Position numbers and translations under genes: made by a program. This document shows positions 1,815 through 34,448 of a stretch of DNA of 64,000 nucleotides, one piece after another. The notes under the pieces are model-generated. The model ran no database searches. It was not told the DNA's origin and was given only the letters and a program-made list of their open reading frames with translations. Location of the stretch: IMG/VR virus record IMGVR_UViG_3300046542_000291, positions 246,397 to 310,396 of that record. One strand, 5' to 3'. The number at the start of each line of letters is the position of its first letter. The first letter of the stretch is position 1.

Positions 1815-2297
1815 TCACTCGACAACTTCTTCTTGCATCCATGGAGGGTAGATTACCACCATCTCGTTGGGCATCTGCTCAGAGGCCTGTTTGATCATTT
1901 CGGATACCAGAGGGAACTTCAGATTACCGTTACCGCAACCCAGAGGTGGAACAACGATCTTCCATTTCGGATTGATCTCACCGTCCTCTTCACCGACGTG
2001 CTCTGTCATCCAGTGCAGTCCTTCGGCGATGTAGTCGTAGCGAGAGTCATTCCGCCAGTTCTCTTTGGTGGGGAACATCATGTAATGCTTGCCATCTTCC
2101 GCTTGGTAGATGGCTGGATTACCGATGGTGATGATTTTCATTTTGCAGTCATGCTTGTAGCGTTTGAACAACTCTGGGAACTTGATCGCGAAATTCTCCG
2201 CCAATCCCTTGCCCATAGCACCGACTGTGTTAACTGTGATGAGGTAAAGATCACCTGACTCTTGAAAGATGTCCTTACCGATTACGAAATTAGCCAT
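1815..2297 (-). CDS. macrodomain ADP-ribosylhydrolase (DarG/TARG1/Poa1p-like)
   Basis: Motifs TVNTVGAMGKGLA, FPTKENWR and PPLGCGNGNL. Confidence 0.9.
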   Translation of the reverse strand: MANFVIGKDIFQESGDLYLITVNTVGAMGKGLAENFAIKFPELFKRYKHDCKMKIITIGNPAIYQAEDGKHYMMFPTKENWRNDSRYDYIAEGLHWMTEHVGEEDGEINPKWKIVVPPLGCGNGNLKFPLVSEMIKQASEQMPNEMVVIYPPWMQEEVVE

Positions 2298-3747: not shown

Positions 3748-3766
3748 TTATAGTAACCTAAATAAA

Positions 3767-3786
3767 GTCCTCCCCGAAGGGAGGAC
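3767..3786 (-). terminator. intrinsic terminator, cUUCGg
   Basis: gtcctccc-cgaa-gggaggac followed by TTTATTT on the minus strand. Confidence 0.8.
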
Positions 3787-3794
3787 ATATGTCG

Positions 3795-5189
3795 TCAAGT
3801 GACAGTTGGACCCAGATCCGTTTTGGGAACGTCTTCGCCATCCTTTCGGTTGATGAAGATAGCAAGCGTGACAATTCCGGGATATCTTGAAGCCTTAGCA
3901 CTGTTATCCGCCGGCTTACGCTGTTCGTCTACACCTAATAGCACACCGTAGTATATTTCTACTAGGTTCCCGTTCACCGACATGAACTTCACAGGCATGC
4001 CTGGATAGAGCAAGTCTGTATCGCCATGCCACCATTCCATCTTCACAAACTGTCCACGGCGTTTAGCCATTTCGGAGTAATGCTTGAATGGATTGGAAGT
4101 TGCTCTGTCTACTGCCCAACGGATGTTGTTGTAACCCGTCTGGAGAACTTCTGTCCCTACTTCGAAAAGATTGGATGCACGATCCACCAAGGTGCGGTTA
4201 TCCTTCTCCACACCGAATTCCCCTAAGAACTTCGTCACATCACTGAAGCGTAGCCCGTTACCCTGCGTCAGGCTTTGTGCAAGCCCTTTGTCGAGGCTCT
4301 TGGCGTCACCTGTGGCAATGACGGTGATATCGTTCTCTCGCACCTTATACGTGCGCTCAGCGCCTTGGTAGCGATCGTTCGGTACGTTGATGACCTTGAG
4401 GGTCTTCGCATTCTTTCGATAGCGCAACGTATCGTAGAGGGGATAGATGTACCAGTACTGGTCTTGTAGATACCGGCCGAGTCCAGTGGCGTAAACACCA
4501 CCTTCGTCATTCTGCAAGTAGGCTGGAATATCCTTGATCATGATCCCATCGGGGAAGTTGATTTGTTTTCTGATCTCAGTGTTAAAACCATCGACCGTAT
4601 TGATCCCGAGGATGCGTTGGTGTTCCGCACCTTTCTGGTTCTGTAGCGTTTCCGCAAGAGCCGACTGCATGGCCATCATGGTTGTGCACTGGCGCAGTGT
4701 TGTGCCGTACGACATCATGTTGACACGGTAAGCCGATTCTTCAATGAGCTGAAGAGCGACGGGAATCATTCCGACCTGGTTCATCGCTTCGCGCGATTTC
4801 AACTGAGAGCTCTTACCCGACAAAGACATGTCCTGTTGGGTGATGAGTACAGCTCTGTAACGAATCGTTTCAATCTGCCGTGTAGGGTCGGGAGAAGTGG
4901 TGTTGATCTTCAGGGGAACGTACTTCACTTCCATAACCAAGTTGTCTCGGTTAGGGACGATGTCGTACTGGTAGTCCCCCATTAGGTACATCACTTCAAC
5001 CATCCGGTGGTCGGCAAACTGTTTCCCTGCGTAATCACGGTTGAGGTGGTAGAAATCGGTGCGCATGGGCGTCAACCACTGGCCTTCCTTGACCATGAGG
5101 TTTAGATCGATACGCCAATTGGAGTTCGAATCCCCGGACGCTTTAATCTCATCCACTTCTCGCATGATTTGCGTGCTGTCAATGGACAT
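3795..5189 (-). CDS. virion structural protein (phiKZ gp101-like; probable start MSIDSTQ)
   Basis: Long ORF in the structural operon; ATG at 5189 abuts the upstream stop; assignment by synteny. Confidence 0.6.
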   Translation of the reverse strand: MSIDSTQIMREVDEIKASGDSNSNWRIDLNLMVKEGQWLTPMRTDFYHLNRDYAGKQFADHRMVEVMYLMGDYQYDIVPNRDNLVMEVKYVPLKINTTSPDPTRQIETIRYRAVLITQQDMSLSGKSSQLKSREAMNQVGMIPVALQLIEESAYRVNMMSYGTTLRQCTTMMAMQSALAETLQNQKGAEHQRILGINTVDGFNTEIRKQINFPDGIMIKDIPAYLQNDEGGVYATGLGRYLQDQYWYIYPLYDTLRYRKNAKTLKVINVPNDRYQGAERTYKVRENDITVIATGDAKSLDKGLAQSLTQGNGLRFSDVTKFLGEFGVEKDNRTLVDRASNLFEVGTEVLQTGYNNIRWAVDRATSNPFKHYSEMAKRRGQFVKMEWWHGDTDLLYPGMPVKFMSVNGNLVEIYYGVLLGVDEQRKPADNSAKASRYPGIVTLAIFINRKDGEDVPKTDLGPTVT

Positions 5190-29343: not shown

Positions 29344-31293
29344 ATGTCGGATATTTCTTTTACCAAGGAAGACATTAAAGGTTACGAAGCAAAGCACATC
29401 ACTTATGTCACGGACCAGTTCGGCAGACAGCATGATGCGCATTTTGTAAAAGAGATCATCCACCTTAAGGATGGTCGTAAGATCCCTCACTTACGTAAGT
29501 GGGAGGACTACCAACGTCCATACTGGATTACACAGAAGGGTCGTCAGAACCACCAAGAGAAGAAAGACTACGAAGTAGAGGAGAACCTCACTCGTTACAT
29601 GTCTTCGCAGATCATGATGCCTTCAGCGATTGCTAAGGCGTTGAATGATTACTCGATGGGTCCACGACCACGACTGAAACAGTTGGCGCGTTCTCCGTAC
29701 CTGTACGGTGCGGATGTGAGTTCGGCATGTTGCTTAAAGAACGCATACCAGACTCGATTCCCTGGCCTGATCTCCGGTAACACGGTAGCAGGTGGCGACA
29801 TTGAGACCAACGTCTACGAGTCAGATCGTGACGGTGAAATCATTTGTATGTCCGTTACACATAAAAGCAATGTCTATCTGGCGTATCTGAAACGTTGGGT
29901 GCATGACATTGACGATCCAGTAAAGGAAACTCTGGATGGTATTGATTCGATGCCTGAGTTGGCGGCATTGAAGAGAGCACGGGGATTGAACGTTGAAGTG
30001 GAAGTCTGTGAGACTCCTGCGGATATCGTGATCCAGTGTCTCAAGCGCCTGCACACATGGAAGCCTGACTTCTTTGCTTTCTGGAACATCGAGTTCGACA
30101 TGACTCGCATGCTGAAAGCGTTGAACGACTACGGTGTTGATCCGAAGGATGTATTCTCGGACGAATCGATTCCAACTAATTATCGCTACTTTCACTTCAA
30201 GAAAGATCAGGCGATGATGACCACGGCTTCGGGTGTCACGAAGTCACGTGGACCTGAGGATCAGTGGCATTGGATTACAGCTCCGGCTTCGTTCCAGTGC
30301 ATCGACATGATGGCGACCTACCGGGTAACGCGTCTGTCGAAAGGTAAGGAACCGAGTTATGCCCTGCAGCGGATTCTTCGTAAGGAGTTAGACGTTTCAG
30401 AGAAGGTAACGATTGTTGGTCCAGATGACTTGGCTAAGTTCCATGCAAAATGTGACAAGCTGATCGAAGGTTCCAACGGTGGGTATCCGTACTGGTTCTT
30501 GAATGACAAGCAAGTGGATTGCTTGACTGAAGGTAGTGTGAACGTCGGTGACAAGGTTCACATGTCGATTGACTTCGGTAAGTTGAACTTCCCAGAAGCC
30601 GACCACTTGACAGGGATCGAGTGGCACCGTTTCATGCAAACGAAGCACAAGATCAAATACGGTCTTTACAACATCATCGACAGTATGCGTCTGGAACAAC
30701 TGGACGAGAAGATCAACGACCTGGAACGCTCCGTGACGTTGTTCTCGAAATCTTCGGATTACAAGAACTTCTCCTCCAACCCTAAGCGTCTGGTTGACGA
30801 CATGCACTTCTGGTACTTGAAGCGTGGCCAAGTAATTGGTACGTCTTCGGATCAGATGGTTCACGATCTCGACAAGTACGTGGTGGATCACAAGGAATGG
30901 ATTGTTACTCTGCCCAGTTACATGGCGGGGCAGCATGGCATCAGGTGTATTAAGGATCTTCCTGACTACTGTACGTTAATCTTTGTTCACGTCGCCGACT
31001 TGGACATTGTATCGACTTATCCGAACGTTAGTCAGATCCTGAACATTGCTCGTGAAACAACCGTGATGGAATTCTCTGCTATCGAGGGGGTACCTGAACG
31101 GATCAGGCGTGCTGTCGGGGTGAACTTGACGGCAGGTCGTGTGAACTCAATTGAGATTACACAGCAAGTCATGGGTGCTCCACGTTTGGACAATCTGTTG
31201 GCCGCTTACGCTGCGAAACGTGCAGGTGTGGCAATCAACCCATCGTCGAACGAGGACTCCATCGAAAAGAAGTCGGTTCCGGTGGCAGCGTAG
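29344..31293 (+). CDS. family B DNA polymerase, split subunit with 3'-5' exonuclease and motif A (phiKZ gp82-like)
   Basis: GDIET (ExoI), FWNIEFD (ExoII), YNIIDS (ExoIII) and DLDIVSTYPN (motif A). Motifs B and C are absent. Confidence 0.85.
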   Translation: MSDISFTKEDIKGYEAKHITYVTDQFGRQHDAHFVKEIIHLKDGRKIPHLRKWEDYQRPYWITQKGRQNHQEKKDYEVEENLTRYMSSQIMMPSAIAKALNDYSMGPRPRLKQLARSPYLYGADVSSACCLKNAYQTRFPGLISGNTVAGGDIETNVYESDRDGEIICMSVTHKSNVYLAYLKRWVHDIDDPVKETLDGIDSMPELAALKRARGLNVEVEVCETPADIVIQCLKRLHTWKPDFFAFWNIEFDMTRMLKALNDYGVDPKDVFSDESIPTNYRYFHFKKDQAMMTTASGVTKSRGPEDQWHWITAPASFQCIDMMATYRVTRLSKGKEPSYALQRILRKELDVSEKVTIVGPDDLAKFHAKCDKLIEGSNGGYPYWFLNDKQVDCLTEGSVNVGDKVHMSIDFGKLNFPEADHLTGIEWHRFMQTKHKIKYGLYNIIDSMRLEQLDEKINDLERSVTLFSKSSDYKNFSSNPKRLVDDMHFWYLKRGQVIGTSSDQMVHDLDKYVVDHKEWIVTLPSYMAGQHGIRCIKDLPDYCTLIFVHVADLDIVSTYPNVSQILNIARETTVMEFSAIEGVPERIRRAVGVNLTAGRVNSIEITQQVMGAPRLDNLLAAYAAKRAGVAINPSSNEDSIEKKSVPVAA

Positions 31294-31639
31294 AGGTGGG
31301 TACGAGTGTAGCAGCGTAGGGGACACGAGGTTCTCAGCAATGTTCGCTCGTATGCCCGATGGGCGAACCATTGAAGCTCATTATCAGTGTGACATTAAAG
31401 GACATGCTCCTGGGTCCAGTGATTGGAGACTAGGGAAGGGTAAGCCGCCGTTAGATACATCCATAGACACCTGGGCTGCTTACAAGCAGCTTTGGGTAGA
31501 GTGGGCACGGCATAACCCAGAACTTATCTCGGAGCTGTCTATAGTGGCTTCGGCTAACGACAACGTGCTATCGGACGTCTTTGCGAATACGGACATCTCA
31601 CAAGCGAGAGCTTTGTGTGAAATCCTAAACGCGGCATAA
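31220..31639 (+). CDS. NADAR-like hypothetical protein overlapping the polymerase 3' end (start uncertain, GTG 31220/31226)
   Basis: YECSSVGDTRFSAMFARMPDGRTIEAHYQCDIKG...RLGKGK; resembles the NADAR 'S..F...T.E..YQ..K' core. Confidence 0.5.
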   Translation: MQVWQSTHRRTRTPSKRSRFRWQRRGGYECSSVGDTRFSAMFARMPDGRTIEAHYQCDIKGHAPGSSDWRLGKGKPPLDTSIDTWAAYKQLWVEWARHNPELISELSIVASANDNVLSDVFANTDISQARALCEILNAA

Positions 31640-31670
31640 TCGCCCCTCCTTCGGGAGGGGCTTTATGTCG
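31632..31670. terminator. bidirectional terminator
   Basis: cggcataatc-gcccctcc-ttcg-ggaggggc-tttatgtcg between convergent genes. Confidence 0.85.
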
Positions 31671-32882
31671 TTACGGAATGAGTTCCAGAATTGGACGCCA
31701 TGCGTAACCAGAAGTACCAGGGGAACCATCGTTGGTTGGCCAAGCGCTACCAATCGAAGTATAACCCCGAGTGCTACCGTCAAAAGTGTGTGCAAGACCG
31801 CCAGCAATTACGCCGCCAGTGCAAGTACCCAGTTGCGCATCTGTGTAAGCTGCCCAACCCAACGTGTTAACCGATACGTACGTGTTTCCGTACACGCCGT
31901 ACATGTAGCGGTTCCATTCCGCTTCCGTCAAGAGACGGCACTTGTATTGCTTACCAGCGATTGTAACCGTCTTACCCGCAGCCGTGTTGCCAAGACCAGC
32001 GGTGTTCAGACTCGCTCGTGTACACTTGTCTCGAATAGACTTCTGGGCAACGTATACCTCTTTGCCATTGTCCTCGATGAAGTGCATCCACGGTGTAGCG
32101 TCGTCCATCAATGTACCGAAGGAGTAGCTAACCAATGTGGAGAGAGCAGATGGAGTAATGAAGCTTGCGGCCGCCACAAGGCCTTTATACGGAGTTGGCG
32201 GCAGTGTTGATTTCTTAATCAGCATAGGACGCCAACCATACCAGACCTGAGGTGTATTTGGTTGGATGTACCAAAGACCCATAATGTTCGGGTCTTGGGA
32301 ATCTGTCCACGTATTACCCCGTGTAGCGTGACCCCCCTGTGAAACAGCTTCAGCCATAACCGAATGGGTGTAAGGGTCTTGTGAAACACGTGTATCCGAC
32401 AGCCCCAACATGTATTCAGTGTAAGGTCCCCAATTCTCAGTGCCGGCTGGCAATGAGCCTTTATGCTGGCCGCCGTAAACATTGTACATGTAACGGTTCC
32501 AGTCGCCCCCACGGTTACCCGGGGAAGCTGCTACCCCATCGGCTGTCATGCCCTTCATGAACCTAACGACGTACACTTCGCCATTGATGGTAAGTTCGGC
32601 AGCCTGCTGGCGGGTATTGATTTCTTCCCACGTGATGTTGTAGCGCAATGGCTTCTTAGCAATGTAAAGTTCTTGGCCGCCGGTTTCGATGAAGTGTAGC
32701 CAACCAGCATCGCTATTGACTCCAGTGCCTTGTGTTAAGTTGATAGCGGCCGCAAGAGCTGACCCTGTGATGAATTCACTCGACCTCACCACGCCCTTGA
32801 AAGGTGTTCCCGTGGGGTAGGGTAAGTCGGAGTTATCAGGTAGTCCAATGAAACTACCTGAACTTAACATGCATTCAAACAT
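31671..32882 (-). CDS. virion accessory/fibre-like protein with two tandem C-type-lectin-like repeats
   Basis: Two repeats starting TP(F/Y)KG.V....FIT and ending Y(G/A)WRP(M/I)L. Confidence 0.65.
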   Translation of the reverse strand: MFECMLSSGSFIGLPDNSDLPYPTGTPFKGVVRSSEFITGSALAAAINLTQGTGVNSDAGWLHFIETGGQELYIAKKPLRYNITWEEINTRQQAAELTINGEVYVVRFMKGMTADGVAASPGNRGGDWNRYMYNVYGGQHKGSLPAGTENWGPYTEYMLGLSDTRVSQDPYTHSVMAEAVSQGGHATRGNTWTDSQDPNIMGLWYIQPNTPQVWYGWRPMLIKKSTLPPTPYKGLVAAASFITPSALSTLVSYSFGTLMDDATPWMHFIEDNGKEVYVAQKSIRDKCTRASLNTAGLGNTAAGKTVTIAGKQYKCRLLTEAEWNRYMYGVYGNTYVSVNTLGWAAYTDAQLGTCTGGVIAGGLAHTFDGSTRGYTSIGSAWPTNDGSPGTSGYAWRPILELIP

Positions 32883-32894
32883 GATATCTCCAAG

Positions 32895-34448
32895 TTAAGG
32901 GGTATATTTCCAGCAGGCTGTGAAGTTGGTACCACCAGAGCCACCGAAGATATAGATGTCGTCACCCACACGTGCATAAGCCGAGTTATCAGCCATAGCC
33001 CATGGGATAGTACCCAGAGTTACCCAGGTATTACTGGATGGAACGTAACGCATAACTTTCGTTTGATCCGCAGCAACACCAGCCACACCACCAATGACGT
33101 AAACGCCTTGTTTGATGTAGAAGCTTACATGTCCGTAACGGGTACTTGGGACAGCTTGGCGAGCAGTCTGTACCGCGGTAGCTGTAACAATCGCGGTGTT
33201 GAGGGCGCTTGGAGAACCTGGGTAACCACCAGTGGCGTACAGCGTACCAAACGCGTCTGCCAAACCATAGAGCTGGTTACCGTAACTGCCGTAAGCTGTA
33301 CCCCAGGTCTTAGTGCCCAGATCGTAGCGTTGGAATGTGGTATTGTTACCGCCACCCGTTGTCAATCCACCGACAGCAATGAAGCCGTTTCCATCCACAA
33401 TGAGCTTATGTCTCGATCGAGCAGCAGCACTGCCCGTTGGCAATGTAGACCAACTATTCAAGACAGGATCGTACATGACAATGTCGTTTAGATAGGTCGC
33501 GCCGTTAACGCCACCGAAGGCATACATTTTCCCATCAATCGCAACTGCGTCATGCGATGCACGAGGGCTACCACTAACCAAAGCAGTAAACACTTTAGTT
33601 GCCGGGTCGAAGACGTGTAGTTGACCTTGGGTGGTGGTGTTCTGGTCGTACCCACCGTAGATATAAACCTTACCGTCAATCGCAACCGCACTCGCGCTTC
33701 GACGTTGAACAGGCATTACACCTTGATCTTCCCACGTGTCAGCGATCGTTGGTGGTGGAGGAACGTAGTCAAGGATTGGCCGCCAACCATAAGCGTTGCG
33801 ACCAAACCCGCCGTTACCTTCAGCTGCGTTGGCATCGTTGATAACCGTTTTACGTTGGATAACCGCGATACTCTGACCACCGCTGTAGTCACGTCCCCGG
33901 CCAGCATAAGCGTTTGCAATAGTGCTGTGTAGATCAGCACAAAGGGAAATAGTACCGAGTTGAGCTGCACCTTCTACCAAACCCAAATCGCGGTTAGTGT
34001 AGTAGGACCACTGAACACCAGCGGGCCTGTCTGCCCCACCGTAGATCGGATACATGTACTTATCCCATTCTCCACCAGATGGAACACTGATGATACTGCT
34101 GAATGGGTTTTGTGACATACCCGTCATCATACGGACTTTGTATTCTTTACCGGCGATGGTAACAGATTTACCGGCAACTTGTGCAGCAGCTGTCAGAGAA
34201 GCACCCGACATGCCGTAACGCACAGGTAAACGAGCGATGTAAAACTCATGCTCTCCATCGATGTAGTGTAACCAACCAGCATCGACGTTGAATGGTGTAC
34301 CCTCGGTAAGACCAACCAATGCAGCTAGGTCATCCCCTTTTACAAAAGAGGTTGAAGTAACAAAACCTTTGTAGGGTGTACCGGGTACAACAGCTGGGGG
34401 TTCAAAAACGTAACCTGTCGCCCCAGCAGTAATTAATTGTTCGAGCAT
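32895..34448 (-). CDS. virion accessory protein: the same repeat fused to a Kelch beta-propeller
   Basis: N-domain TPYKGFV...YGWRPIL; Kelch blades DGKVYIYGG, DGKMYAFGG, FIAVGG, LYATGG, VYVIGG, DIYIFGG. Confidence 0.8.
   Translation of the reverse strand: MLEQLITAGATGYVFEPPAVVPGTPYKGFVTSTSFVKGDDLAALVGLTEGTPFNVDAGWLHYIDGEHEFYIARLPVRYGMSGASLTAAAQVAGKSVTIAGKEYKVRMMTGMSQNPFSSIISVPSGGEWDKYMYPIYGGADRPAGVQWSYYTNRDLGLVEGAAQLGTISLCADLHSTIANAYAGRGRDYSGGQSIAVIQRKTVINDANAAEGNGGFGRNAYGWRPILDYVPPPPTIADTWEDQGVMPVQRRSASAVAIDGKVYIYGGYDQNTTTQGQLHVFDPATKVFTALVSGSPRASHDAVAIDGKMYAFGGVNGATYLNDIVMYDPVLNSWSTLPTGSAAARSRHKLIVDGNGFIAVGGLTTGGGNNTTFQRYDLGTKTWGTAYGSYGNQLYGLADAFGTLYATGGYPGSPSALNTAIVTATAVQTARQAVPSTRYGHVSFYIKQGVYVIGGVAGVAADQTKVMRYVPSSNTWVTLGTIPWAMADNSAYARVGDDIYIFGGSGGTNFTACWKYTP

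What the first reader, a model, noticed from the sequence alone, without database searches (positions are those of the whole stretch)
31220..31639. NADAR-like gene overlapping the DNA polymerase: candidate anti-DarT1 DNA de-ADP-ribosylase
Seen: the ORF overlaps the polymerase 3' end by about 70 nt in the +1 frame and encodes E-C-S-S...F-S-A...G-R-T-I-E-A-H-Y-Q-C-D-I-K...R-L-G-K. Known: NADAR hydrolases have an 'S.F...T.E..(Y/F)Q..K...GR/K' core and remove guanine ADP-ribose placed by DarT1, which blocks phage replication. Inference: a divergent NADAR co-expressed with the polymerase to clear ADP-ribose lesions.
Basis: inference. Interest (0 to 1): 0.6.

Follow-up and report, generated by a model that had tools for sequence, protein, structure and literature searches.

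The report
Mini-NADAR domain tied to phage polymerase
The small gene overlapping the end of this jumbo phage's DNA polymerase gene is real and folds like a NADAR ADP-ribose-removing enzyme, and in phiKZ and other relatives it appears to be made as a tail on the polymerase by a ribosomal frameshift that nobody has annotated.

Summary
The window is the last 64 kb of a 310-kb phiKZ-like (chimallivirus) genome. The ORF at 31220-31639 exists as described, in the +1 frame, overlapping the polymerase gene by 74 nt. That gene (29344-31293) is the homologue of phiKZ gp82, the N-terminal subunit of the split polymerase (DNAP-N). The conserved part is a 120-aa domain (31277-31636; phrog_9995, E 3e-50).

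The domain gene always follows this polymerase gene. All 16 relatives with the domain in the -1 frame carry C_CCA_AAG or A_AAA_AAG at the junction. The same motif class occurs once in 9,399 other codons. Thirteen of the 16 lack a nearby start codon, and two relatives encode the fusion in frame. This implies an unannotated -1 frameshift that yields a polymerase-NADAR fusion, phiKZ included.

The window's own lineage (+1 frame) has no such heptamer. Relatives have GTG or TTG at the family's start position; the window has CGG. How it is expressed here is unresolved.

The parts
29344..31293 (+). DNA polymerase N-terminal subunit (homologue of phiKZ gp82 = DNAP-N: exonuclease plus the first part of the palm, with motif A 'DLDIVSTYPN' near the C-end)
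   Evidence: phrog_3011 E 1e-232. 201phi2-1 and phiKZ homologues are annotated as DNA polymerase. The split DNAP-N/DNAP-C architecture is described in bioRxiv 10.64898/2026.09.30.755723.
31220..31639 (+).
31277..31636 (+). Conserved 120-aa mini-NADAR (YbiA-fold) domain, family phrog_9995
   Evidence: phrog_9995 positions 2-121. Alignments A1 and A2. AF2 model. Fold searches.
31264..31272 (+). GAA_AAG_AAG in the polymerase frame, invariant at the nucleotide level in all 9 distinct +1-frame relatives. It lies directly 5' of the domain's N-terminus. It may be a recoding site, a coupling signal, or simply dual-coding sequence.
   Evidence: junction alignment; no X_XXY_YYZ heptamer in this lineage
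31274..31276 (+). CGG at the codon where +1-frame relatives have GTG (D6, RVTF4, L011, L013), TTG (Psa21), CTG (L015, L017) or ACG (L014)
31340..31342 (+). Internal ATG with a GAGG 9 nt upstream, used by gene callers (99-aa product P0002). It would remove 21 conserved residues, including invariant Glu10, Ser12, Gly15, Asp16, Arg18, Phe19 and Ser20.
31373..31375 (+). Glu33 of the domain (GAA), invariant; candidate equivalent of the NADAR catalytic Glu (E88 in E. coli C7 NADAR, E36 in T4 AdfN)
   Evidence: invariant columns; papers; the mapping rests on motif and secondary structure only
31397..31399 (+). Lys41 of the domain (AAA), invariant; candidate equivalent of the NADAR phosphate-binding Lys (K95 in C7, K43 in AdfN)
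31574..31576 (+). [quoted passage not shown]
31642..31661 (+). Intrinsic-terminator-like hairpin (8-bp GC-rich stem, then a T-rich tail, TTTATGT) closing the polymerase/domain unit; the next gene is convergent
   Evidence: (ORF 31671..32882 on the minus strand)

Best explanation
The ORF encodes a trimmed, highly divergent member of the NADAR/YbiA-fold superfamily: a 120-aa domain with an invariant Glu-x7-Lys helix motif and an invariant Asp after the last strand. The domain is functionally and physically coupled to the N-terminal subunit of the chimallivirus split B-family DNA polymerase. Shown: the fold; the fixed position directly 3' of the polymerase gene; and, in -1-frame relatives (phiKZ, PA7, Phabio, 201phi2-1, PhiPA3, PS119XW, HPP-Temi, Noxifer and eight metagenomic lineages), a classical bacterial -1 slippery heptamer (C_CCA_AAG or A_AAA_AAG) at the point where domain homology begins, usually with no start codon. 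Two more distant phiKZ-like contigs encode polymerase and domain as one in-frame ORF. Inferred: in those phages a fraction of ribosomes shifts -1 and makes a polymerase-NADAR fusion. Also inferred: the domain is an N-glycosidic ADP-ribosyl hydrolase that removes base-linked ADP-ribose (the DarT1 type on guanine is the obvious candidate) from single-stranded template at the fork. It would complement the macrodomain AdfM that these phages use against DarT2. In the window's own lineage the domain lies in the +1 frame and most relatives offer a GTG or TTG start. In the window that codon is CGG, so the protein is made either from GTG 31220/31226 (a 17-19-aa basic N-terminal extension, translationally coupled to the polymerase) or by a +1/-2 shift at the invariant GAA_AAG_AAG. 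Which of the two applies is not resolved.
For: Reality and extent: phrog_9995 E 2.8e-50; 293 and 798 homologues; 24 invariant columns in 61 sequences.
Context: fusions to DUF4326 (20 of 106), YAcAr SLOG, DUF488-N3a, RNase H and a helicase, and occurrence inside 2,000-6,000-aa proteins. These are the same partners that PMC9503650 and PMC7824862 describe for viral NADAR domains.
Coupling to the polymerase: synteny in every chimallivirus examined. X_XXA_AAG is present at 16 of 16 -1-frame junctions versus 1 in 9,399 other polymerase codons. Thirteen of 16 have no nearby canonical start, and in 12 of these there is none anywhere in the open stretch. PS119XW has GTG but its congener HPP-Temi has GTA, while the heptamer is unchanged. 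In-frame fusions: P0269 (L091, next to a PhiKZ-type capsid gene) and P0136 (L092). C_CCA_AAG and A_AAA_AAG are among the most shift-prone heptamers in E. coli (PMC5009743).
Biological plausibility: DarT2 restricts phiKZ when AdfM is removed (PMC13309987). A T4 NADAR (AdfN) counters DarT1 (PMC11825919). The window's genome has a Macro gene.
Confidence: 0.6

Rival explanations
1. It is a NADAR-fold enzyme, but its substrate is not ADP-ribosylated DNA. It degrades small ADP-ribose-derived signals or toxins, or another ribosyl N-glycoside, as proposed for most phage NADARs. The link to the polymerase would then serve co-regulation or localisation into the phage nucleus.
For: [quoted passage not shown] The family's commonest fusion partners are DUF4326 (a predicted phosphatase acting on ADPr products) and SLOG domains. 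YbiA itself is annotated as an N-glycosidase of riboflavin intermediates.
Against: Covalent tethering to a replicative polymerase subunit (by frameshift or in frame), plus fusions to RNase H and an SF1 helicase/SprT protein, point to a nucleic-acid substrate. The closest structural neighbours are the DarT1-associated type.
Confidence: 0.2
2. It is a non-catalytic accessory module of the polymerase (DNA or partner binding, nuclear import, regulation) that merely retains or converges on a YbiA-like fold.
Against: A polar Glu, Lys and Asp, plus Ser, Asp and Arg of the N-terminal motif, are invariant across about 800 clusters. The domain thrives as a stand-alone protein in N4-like, temperate and other phages and inside polyvalent giant proteins with no polymerase nearby. 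That fits an autonomous enzyme better than a polymerase-specific adaptor.
Confidence: 0.12
3. The gene is what the annotation pipelines call it: a 99-aa protein starting at ATG 31340. The upstream in-frame similarity would be a by-product of conservation of the polymerase 3' end.
For: ATG 31340 has the only Shine-Dalgarno-like GAGG among the candidate starts. D6, Psa21, RVTF4, Phabio and Noxifer are annotated this way.
Against: The 21 residues that would be lost carry 7 of the family's 24 invariant positions (GYECSSxGDxRFSA). They are equally conserved in phages where this stretch lies entirely downstream of the polymerase stop (phiKZ, 201phi2-1, N4-like phages) and in stand-alone homologues that begin M-x-Y-x-W-x-R. 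In the model they form the first strands of the fold.
Confidence: 0.05

Closest known systems
DarT1-associated NADAR antitoxins (DarG1; PDB 8BAT G. lovleyi NADAR; Pfam PF22397) and the phage orphan NADAR AdfN (T4 gp30.3)
   Different: Only 120 aa (the N-terminal extension and one or more core elements are missing). Not detected by PF22397 or PF08719. Glu-Lys spacing is 8, not 7. Not an early stand-alone gene, but attached to or overlapping the replicative polymerase gene. Activity untested.
E. coli YbiA / generic NADAR (PF08719; PDB 2B3W, 8BAU)
   Different: hhalign probability is 0.2%. The Trp-Gly-x-Gly loop and several helices of YbiA have no counterpart.
Bacterial -1 programmed frameshifts on X_XXA_AAG heptamers: dnaX (A_AAA_AAG), copA (C_CCA_AAG) and the tail-chaperone G/GT genes of phages
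   Same: The same heptamers, in the 0 frame of the upstream gene. The downstream frame lacks a start codon. The 0-frame stop follows directly or within 3-34 codons. As with dnaX, the gene concerned belongs to the replisome.
   Different: The shift here adds a whole enzymatic domain to a polymerase subunit; in dnaX and copA the frameshift product is instead a truncated protein. No conserved 3' stem-loop or 5' Shine-Dalgarno stimulator was found. The window's own lineage needs a +1/-2 event or a separate start instead.
AdfM, the chimallivirus nuclear macrodomain that reverses DarT2 thymine ADP-ribosylation (phiKZ gp104)
   Same: The same phage family and the same type of threat (DNA ADP-ribosylation). 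The window's genome also carries a Macro gene.
   Different: An unrelated fold. AdfM is a free protein imported into the phage nucleus and has been demonstrated experimentally.

Membership tests
NADAR superfamily (YbiA fold) | [quoted passage not shown] | tested here: met
NADAR superfamily (YbiA fold) | Conserved catalytic Glu and phosphate-binding Lys on the first core helix (E88/K95 in E. coli C7 NADAR; E36/K43 in AdfN) | tested here: inconclusive
   Glu33 and Lys41 are invariant and bracket helix 32-40 in the motif IExHYQCDVKG. The spacing is 8 rather than 7. No residue-level superposition was available with these tools.
NADAR superfamily (YbiA fold) | [quoted passage not shown] | tested here: inconclusive
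   Invariant Asp100 directly follows the last strand (residues 97-99) in the motif LSDxFA. The feature is defined in PMC11125620. The equivalence is inferred, not superposed.
NADAR superfamily (YbiA fold) | Detection by the family's sequence models (Pfam PF08719 NADAR, PF22397 NADAR-DarT1) or by profile-profile comparison | tested here: not met
   No hit at E<=1 for the window protein, at E<=10 for 61 family members, or in six-frame scans of 6 phage genomes. hhalign versus a 40-sequence YbiA alignment gives probability 0.2%.
NADAR superfamily (YbiA fold) | ADP-ribosyl N-glycohydrolase activity | not testable with these tools
   Needs purified protein and ADP-ribosylated oligonucleotides.
Anti-DarT1 factor (AdfN-like counter-defence) | Rescue of DarT1 toxicity, or of phage plating on DarTG1 hosts, dependent on the catalytic residues | not testable with these tools
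   Only contextual support: AdfN and AdfM are precedents, and the closest structures are of the DarT1-associated type.
-1 programmed ribosomal frameshift (relatives with the domain in the -1 frame) | X_XXY_YYZ slippery heptamer in the 0 frame at the point where the -1-frame product begins | tested here: met
   C_CCA_AAG or A_AAA_AAG at 16 of 16 distinct junctions, 27-63 nt before the Gly-Tyr-Glu motif. The same class of heptamer occurs once in 9,399 other polymerase-frame codons.
-1 programmed ribosomal frameshift (relatives with the domain in the -1 frame) | The downstream conserved ORF lacks its own initiation codon | tested here: met
   Thirteen of 16 have no ATG, GTG or TTG within 30 codons. 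In 12 of these the open stretch (12-44 codons) contains none at all. phiKZ has ATA and Phabio, Noxifer and HPP-Temi have GTA at the position where PhiPA3 has ATG.
-1 programmed ribosomal frameshift (relatives with the domain in the -1 frame) | A stimulatory element (3' structure or 5' SD) and a detectable trans-frame protein | tested here: inconclusive
   RNAalifold gives only a weak, non-covarying hairpin about 18 nt 3' of the site. In the C_CCA_AAG group a 0-frame stop abuts the heptamer in all but 201phi2-1, where one codon intervenes. Protein evidence cannot be tested here.
Programmed frameshift in the window itself (+1 frame) | A recognised +1 or -1 shift site in the polymerase frame | tested here: not met
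   No X_XXY_YYZ heptamer and no CUU_UGA- or CCC_UGA-type site. Only the invariant GAA_AAG_AAG is present. Most relatives in this lineage have GTG or TTG at the domain's N-terminus, so separate initiation is a sufficient explanation there.

The most novel reading that the evidence does not exclude
The replicative DNA polymerase of phiKZ-type nucleus-forming phages exists in two forms. One is the annotated DNAP-N. The other is a frameshift product (dnaX/copA-type heptamers, -1) that carries a miniature NADAR base-de-ADP-ribosylase at its C-terminus. This would make a replicase that erases DarT-type lesions from the template as it goes. The window's lineage would have converted the arrangement into an overlapping +1-frame gene or a rarer +1/-2 recoding event at GAA_AAG_AAG.
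Probability: 0.3. Interest if true: 0.85.

Novelty: new variant of a known kind. Interest (0 to 1): 0.74.

Why it matters
There are three reasons.

1. It gives a fold and a testable activity to a widespread phage family of unknown function. The family (phrog_9995) has about 800 clusters at 50% identity. It occurs in jumbo, N4-like, temperate and crAss-like phages and inside giant polyvalent proteins. Current domain libraries miss it.

2. It predicts an unannotated recoding event in phiKZ, one of the most studied jumbo phages. The annotated 38-aa 'PHIKZ082.1' and phrog_33573 are only the tail of a 120-aa domain that has no start codon. The polymerase complex recently solved by cryo-EM was reconstituted from gp82 and gp50 as annotated, and the paper mentions neither a frameshift nor this domain.

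3. If the domain removes base-linked ADP-ribose, it would show that a counter-defence enzyme can be built into the replisome itself. It would also complete, alongside AdfM, the chimallivirus answer to both DarT classes.

Tried and rejected
- Sequence routes to NADAR all failed: Pfam, NCBIfam and PADLOC scans of the protein; Pfam at E<=10 on 61 members; six-frame PF08719 and PF22397 scans of the own genome and five related genomes; phmmer and hmmsearch against PDB sequences, which gave only chance uL3 hits; and hhalign, local and global, against a YbiA-family alignment built from 40 homologues.
- The language-model look-alike search pointed to DUF4326 at sub-threshold scores. I read this as an echo of the frequent DUF4326 fusions, not as homology, because the structure search does not support it (TM 0.3).
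- RNA structure: consensus folds 3' of the C_CCA_AAG sites and 3' of GAA_AAG_AAG in the window lineage showed no covariation. The second is broken in the window, so neither is claimed as a stimulator.
- A crude Shine-Dalgarno scan did not discriminate between candidate starts.
- Relatives of a virus record cannot be drawn with the genome search, so NADAR comparison sequences came from E. coli YbiA homologues only. These have low diversity, which limits the hhalign test.
- Literature searches for a described frameshift in jumbo-phage polymerases or for gp82.1 found nothing.
- Complex prediction, read laying and the look-up of sequencing runs were not used, because none would settle the open points.
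Full report
**What the window is.** The window is bases 246,397-310,396 of a 310,396-bp virus record with direct terminal repeats. Its nearest named relatives are Pseudomonas chimalliviruses: 201phi2-1, D6, RVTF4, Psa21, Phabio and phiKZ. The 'polymerase' at 29344..31293 matches phrog_3011 (E 1e-232). It is the homologue of phiKZ gp82. A 2026 preprint shows that gp82 is the N-terminal subunit (DNAP-N: N-terminal domain, exonuclease, part of the palm) of a split B-family polymerase completed by gp50.

**Checking the observation.** GTG at 31220 opens a 139-codon frame that ends at TAA 31637-31639. It is the +1 frame relative to the polymerase and overlaps it by 74 nt. The quoted residues are present. 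The ORF is not a chance frame. It matches phrog_9995 at E 2.8e-50. It has 293 word-search homologues and 798 representatives at E<=0.001 in the 1.84-billion-protein library.

Stand-alone homologues are 121-130 aa and begin M-x-Y/F-x-W-x-R-x-G-G-Y-E-C-S-S. Gene callers start the window's gene, and those of D6, Psa21, RVTF4, Phabio and Noxifer, at an internal ATG (31340 here). That choice deletes 21 residues carrying seven invariant positions. In phiKZ only the last 38 codons are annotated, as PHIKZ082.1. phrog_33573 is that fragment.

**Fold.** No Pfam, NCBIfam or PADLOC model matches the protein. An AlphaFold2 model built from a 61-sequence alignment is very confident (pLDDT 97.3, pTM 0.90).
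- Foldseek against the PDB ranks G. lovleyi NADAR (8BAT) first (probability 0.96, TMq 0.62). The only other matches with TM above 0.5 are E. coli YbiA and Phytophthora NADAR.
- The nearest ESM-Atlas cluster is a mostly viral 129-aa cluster named 'DarT1-associated NADAR antitoxin domain' (TM 0.73, rmsd 2.6 A over 105 residues).
- In the viral structure library, the first matches outside the family itself are annotated NADAR proteins.

I therefore accept the NADAR/YbiA fold.

**Catalytic residues.** Published work defines the catalytic set as follows. A Glu and a Lys lie seven residues apart on a helix: E88/K95 in E. coli C7 NADAR and E36/K43 in T4 AdfN. [quoted passage not shown] In this family, Glu33 and Lys41 (IExHYQCDVKG, bracketing helix 32-40) and Asp100 (LSDxFA, directly after the last strand 97-99) are invariant. 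This fits, but it is an inference from motif and secondary structure. I could not obtain a residue-level superposition, and the Glu-Lys spacing is 8, not 7.

**Sequence-level membership fails.** PF08719 and PF22397 find nothing, even at E<=10 or in six-frame genome scans. hhalign against a YbiA-family alignment gives 0.2% probability. The comparison alignment had low diversity, which weakens this negative result.

**Context across the family.** The domain occurs alone in N4-like phages (Delftia RG-2014, Achromobacter phiAxp-3), Sphingomonas PAU and Rhizobium 16-3. It is part of a helicase gene in a crAss-like phage. Among 106 representatives it is fused to DUF4326 (20), YAcAr/DprA-like SLOG domains (6), RNase H (3), DUF488-N3a (3), an AlkB-like oxygenase and a guanylate kinase. 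One protein couples it to SprT and an SF1 helicase. Dozens of representatives embed it in 2,000-6,000-aa proteins. The Aravind group describes exactly this partner set (DUF4326, SLOG, Macro) for viral NADAR domains. That is independent support that the domain plays the NADAR role in these architectures.

**The unexpected part: how it is expressed.** In every chimallivirus examined, the domain lies directly 3' of the gp82-type polymerase gene. I compared the junctions in 8 GenBank phages and 80 IMG/VR loci.

Where the domain is in the -1 frame there are 16 distinct junctions: phiKZ, PA7, Phabio, 201phi2-1, PhiPA3, PS119XW, HPP-Temi, Noxifer and eight metagenomic lineages.
- In all 16, the polymerase 0-frame carries C_CCA_AAG (10 junctions, the 0-frame stop abutting the heptamer in nine and following one codon later in 201phi2-1) or A_AAA_AAG (6 junctions, with the 0-frame stop 3-34 codons later). 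The heptamer sits at the point where domain homology starts.
- The same class of heptamer occurs once in the other 9,399 polymerase-frame codons of these loci. That gives an expectation of 0.002 per junction window.
- Thirteen of the 16 have no ATG, GTG or TTG within 30 codons. In 12 of them the open stretch contains none at all.
- phiKZ reads ..C_CCA_AAG_TAA in the polymerase frame and CCC AAA GTA ATA TAT CAG TGG (P-K-V-I-Y-Q-W) in the -1 frame, with a stop five codons upstream.
- PS119XW has GTG where its congener HPP-Temi has GTA, while the heptamer is unchanged.
- Two more distant phiKZ-like contigs encode the fusion in frame. P0269 is 698 aa: polymerase homology spans residues 41-536 (E 1.5e-37) and the domain spans 562-677, next to a PhiKZ-type capsid gene. 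P0136 contains the last ~95 polymerase residues continuing ..EPKDKPLYTWSRKGGYE into the domain.

C_CCA_AAG and A_AAA_AAG are among the most shift-prone heptamers in E. coli. From my own knowledge, they are the natural sites of copA and dnaX. I conclude that in these phages the domain is made as a C-terminal extension of DNAP-N by -1 frameshifting. I found no conserved stimulatory RNA structure, no protein-level evidence, and no mention of this in the literature available to me.

**The window's own lineage is different.** In the window and in D6, RVTF4, Psa21 and L011-L017 (nine distinct junctions), the domain is in the +1 frame. The polymerase stop lies inside the domain's ninth or tenth codon. 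There is no slippery heptamer.

The codon eight positions before the Gly of Gly-Tyr-Glu is GTG in four sequences, TTG in one, CTG in two, ACG in one, and CGG in the window (31274-31276). Some relatives also have TTG four codons further upstream. So most relatives could initiate conventionally, coupled to termination of the polymerase. The window could do so only from GTG 31226 or 31220. That would add a basic extension of 17-19 residues.

Immediately 5' of this codon, all nine sequences share GAA_AAG_AAG with no synonymous variation. This is the same position the heptamers occupy in the -1 lineages. A -2 re-pairing of tRNA-Lys from AAG to the AAA two bases back, or a +1 slip, would land in the domain frame. 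That is conjecture. No recognised +1 site is present, and a predicted hairpin in the relatives is broken in the window. All 24 family-invariant residues are intact in the window, so the gene is under selection. How translation enters the frame remains open.

**Mechanism.** *Shown:* the fold; the invariant polar triad; the obligatory genomic coupling to DNAP-N, which in many relatives is translational as well; and a terminator-like hairpin right after the gene (31642-31661). *Inferred:* an ADP-ribosyl N-glycohydrolase tethered to the replicase that clears base-linked ADP-ribose from single-stranded template.

This inference is plausible for four reasons. DarT enzymes modify ssDNA and block replication. 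DarT2 restricts phiKZ once its macrodomain AdfM is removed, even though the phage nucleus largely excludes the toxin. A T4 NADAR (AdfN) neutralises DarT1. And this genome also carries a Macro gene.

The main rival is that the enzyme acts on small ADP-ribose derivatives, as argued for phage NADARs generally. The polymerase, RNase H and helicase fusions favour a nucleic-acid substrate, but nothing here tests that.

**Verdict.**
- The NADAR-fold interpretation is supported by structure but not by sequence.
- The anti-DarT1 function is a reasonable, untested hypothesis.
The 'overlap' is the local form of a family-wide coupling that, in phiKZ and many relatives, looks like an unannotated -1 programmed frameshift fusing a mini-NADAR to the replicative polymerase.

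Noticed in passing
window ~1908-2237 (-) (G000:C1:248304-248633): A Macro-domain ORF (PF01661, E 6e-8, above the Pfam cut-off; open frame of 164 aa). It is a candidate homologue of the chimallivirus anti-DarT2 factor AdfM (phiKZ gp104).
   Followed up: partly
L007 (PhiPA3) 1921-~2240; L095 (HPP-Temi) 246-1844: The gp82-type polymerase gene is interrupted inside motif A in PhiPA3: the CDS is annotated as ending ..HVADLD*, and the remaining ~85 codons resume about 320 nt later. In HPP-Temi the gene is interrupted by an HNH endonuclease ORF. Both look like intron or intein-type insertions in DNAP-N.
   Followed up: no
L092 2977-3003 (MAG contig WPCG01120037.1): In this phiKZ-like contig the polymerase ORF stops at TGA 2996-2998 and continues in the -1 frame (open from 2980, ATG 3001) through motif A into the in-frame NADAR-like domain. 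This is either an assembly indel or a second recoding or split site.
   Followed up: no
window 31671-32882 (-) and 32895-34448 (-): Two adjacent virion-protein paralogues share an N-terminal phrog_1062/phrog_16120 module. The second carries a five-blade Kelch beta-propeller (Kelch_1, E 3e-33). They are probably host-recognition or fibre proteins.
   Followed up: no
L001 (phiKZ) 3750-3866; phrog_33573: PHIKZ082.1 (38 aa) and the PHROG built on it are only the C-terminal helix of the 120-aa domain. They are an annotation artefact of the missing start codon.
   Followed up: yes
L055, L068, L075-L079, L081, L085 (IMG/VR contigs of 48-101 kb); P0186, P0222, P0253 and others: The same domain sits in the middle of ORFs of more than 2,000 codons (up to 6,146 aa) that otherwise have no Pfam or PHROG annotation. 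These are giant polyvalent-type phage proteins worth dissecting domain by domain.
   Followed up: partly
window 31285-31293 and 31311-31319: A 9-nt direct repeat, GCAGCGTAG. The first copy contains the polymerase stop codon. It is probably coincidental.
   Followed up: no
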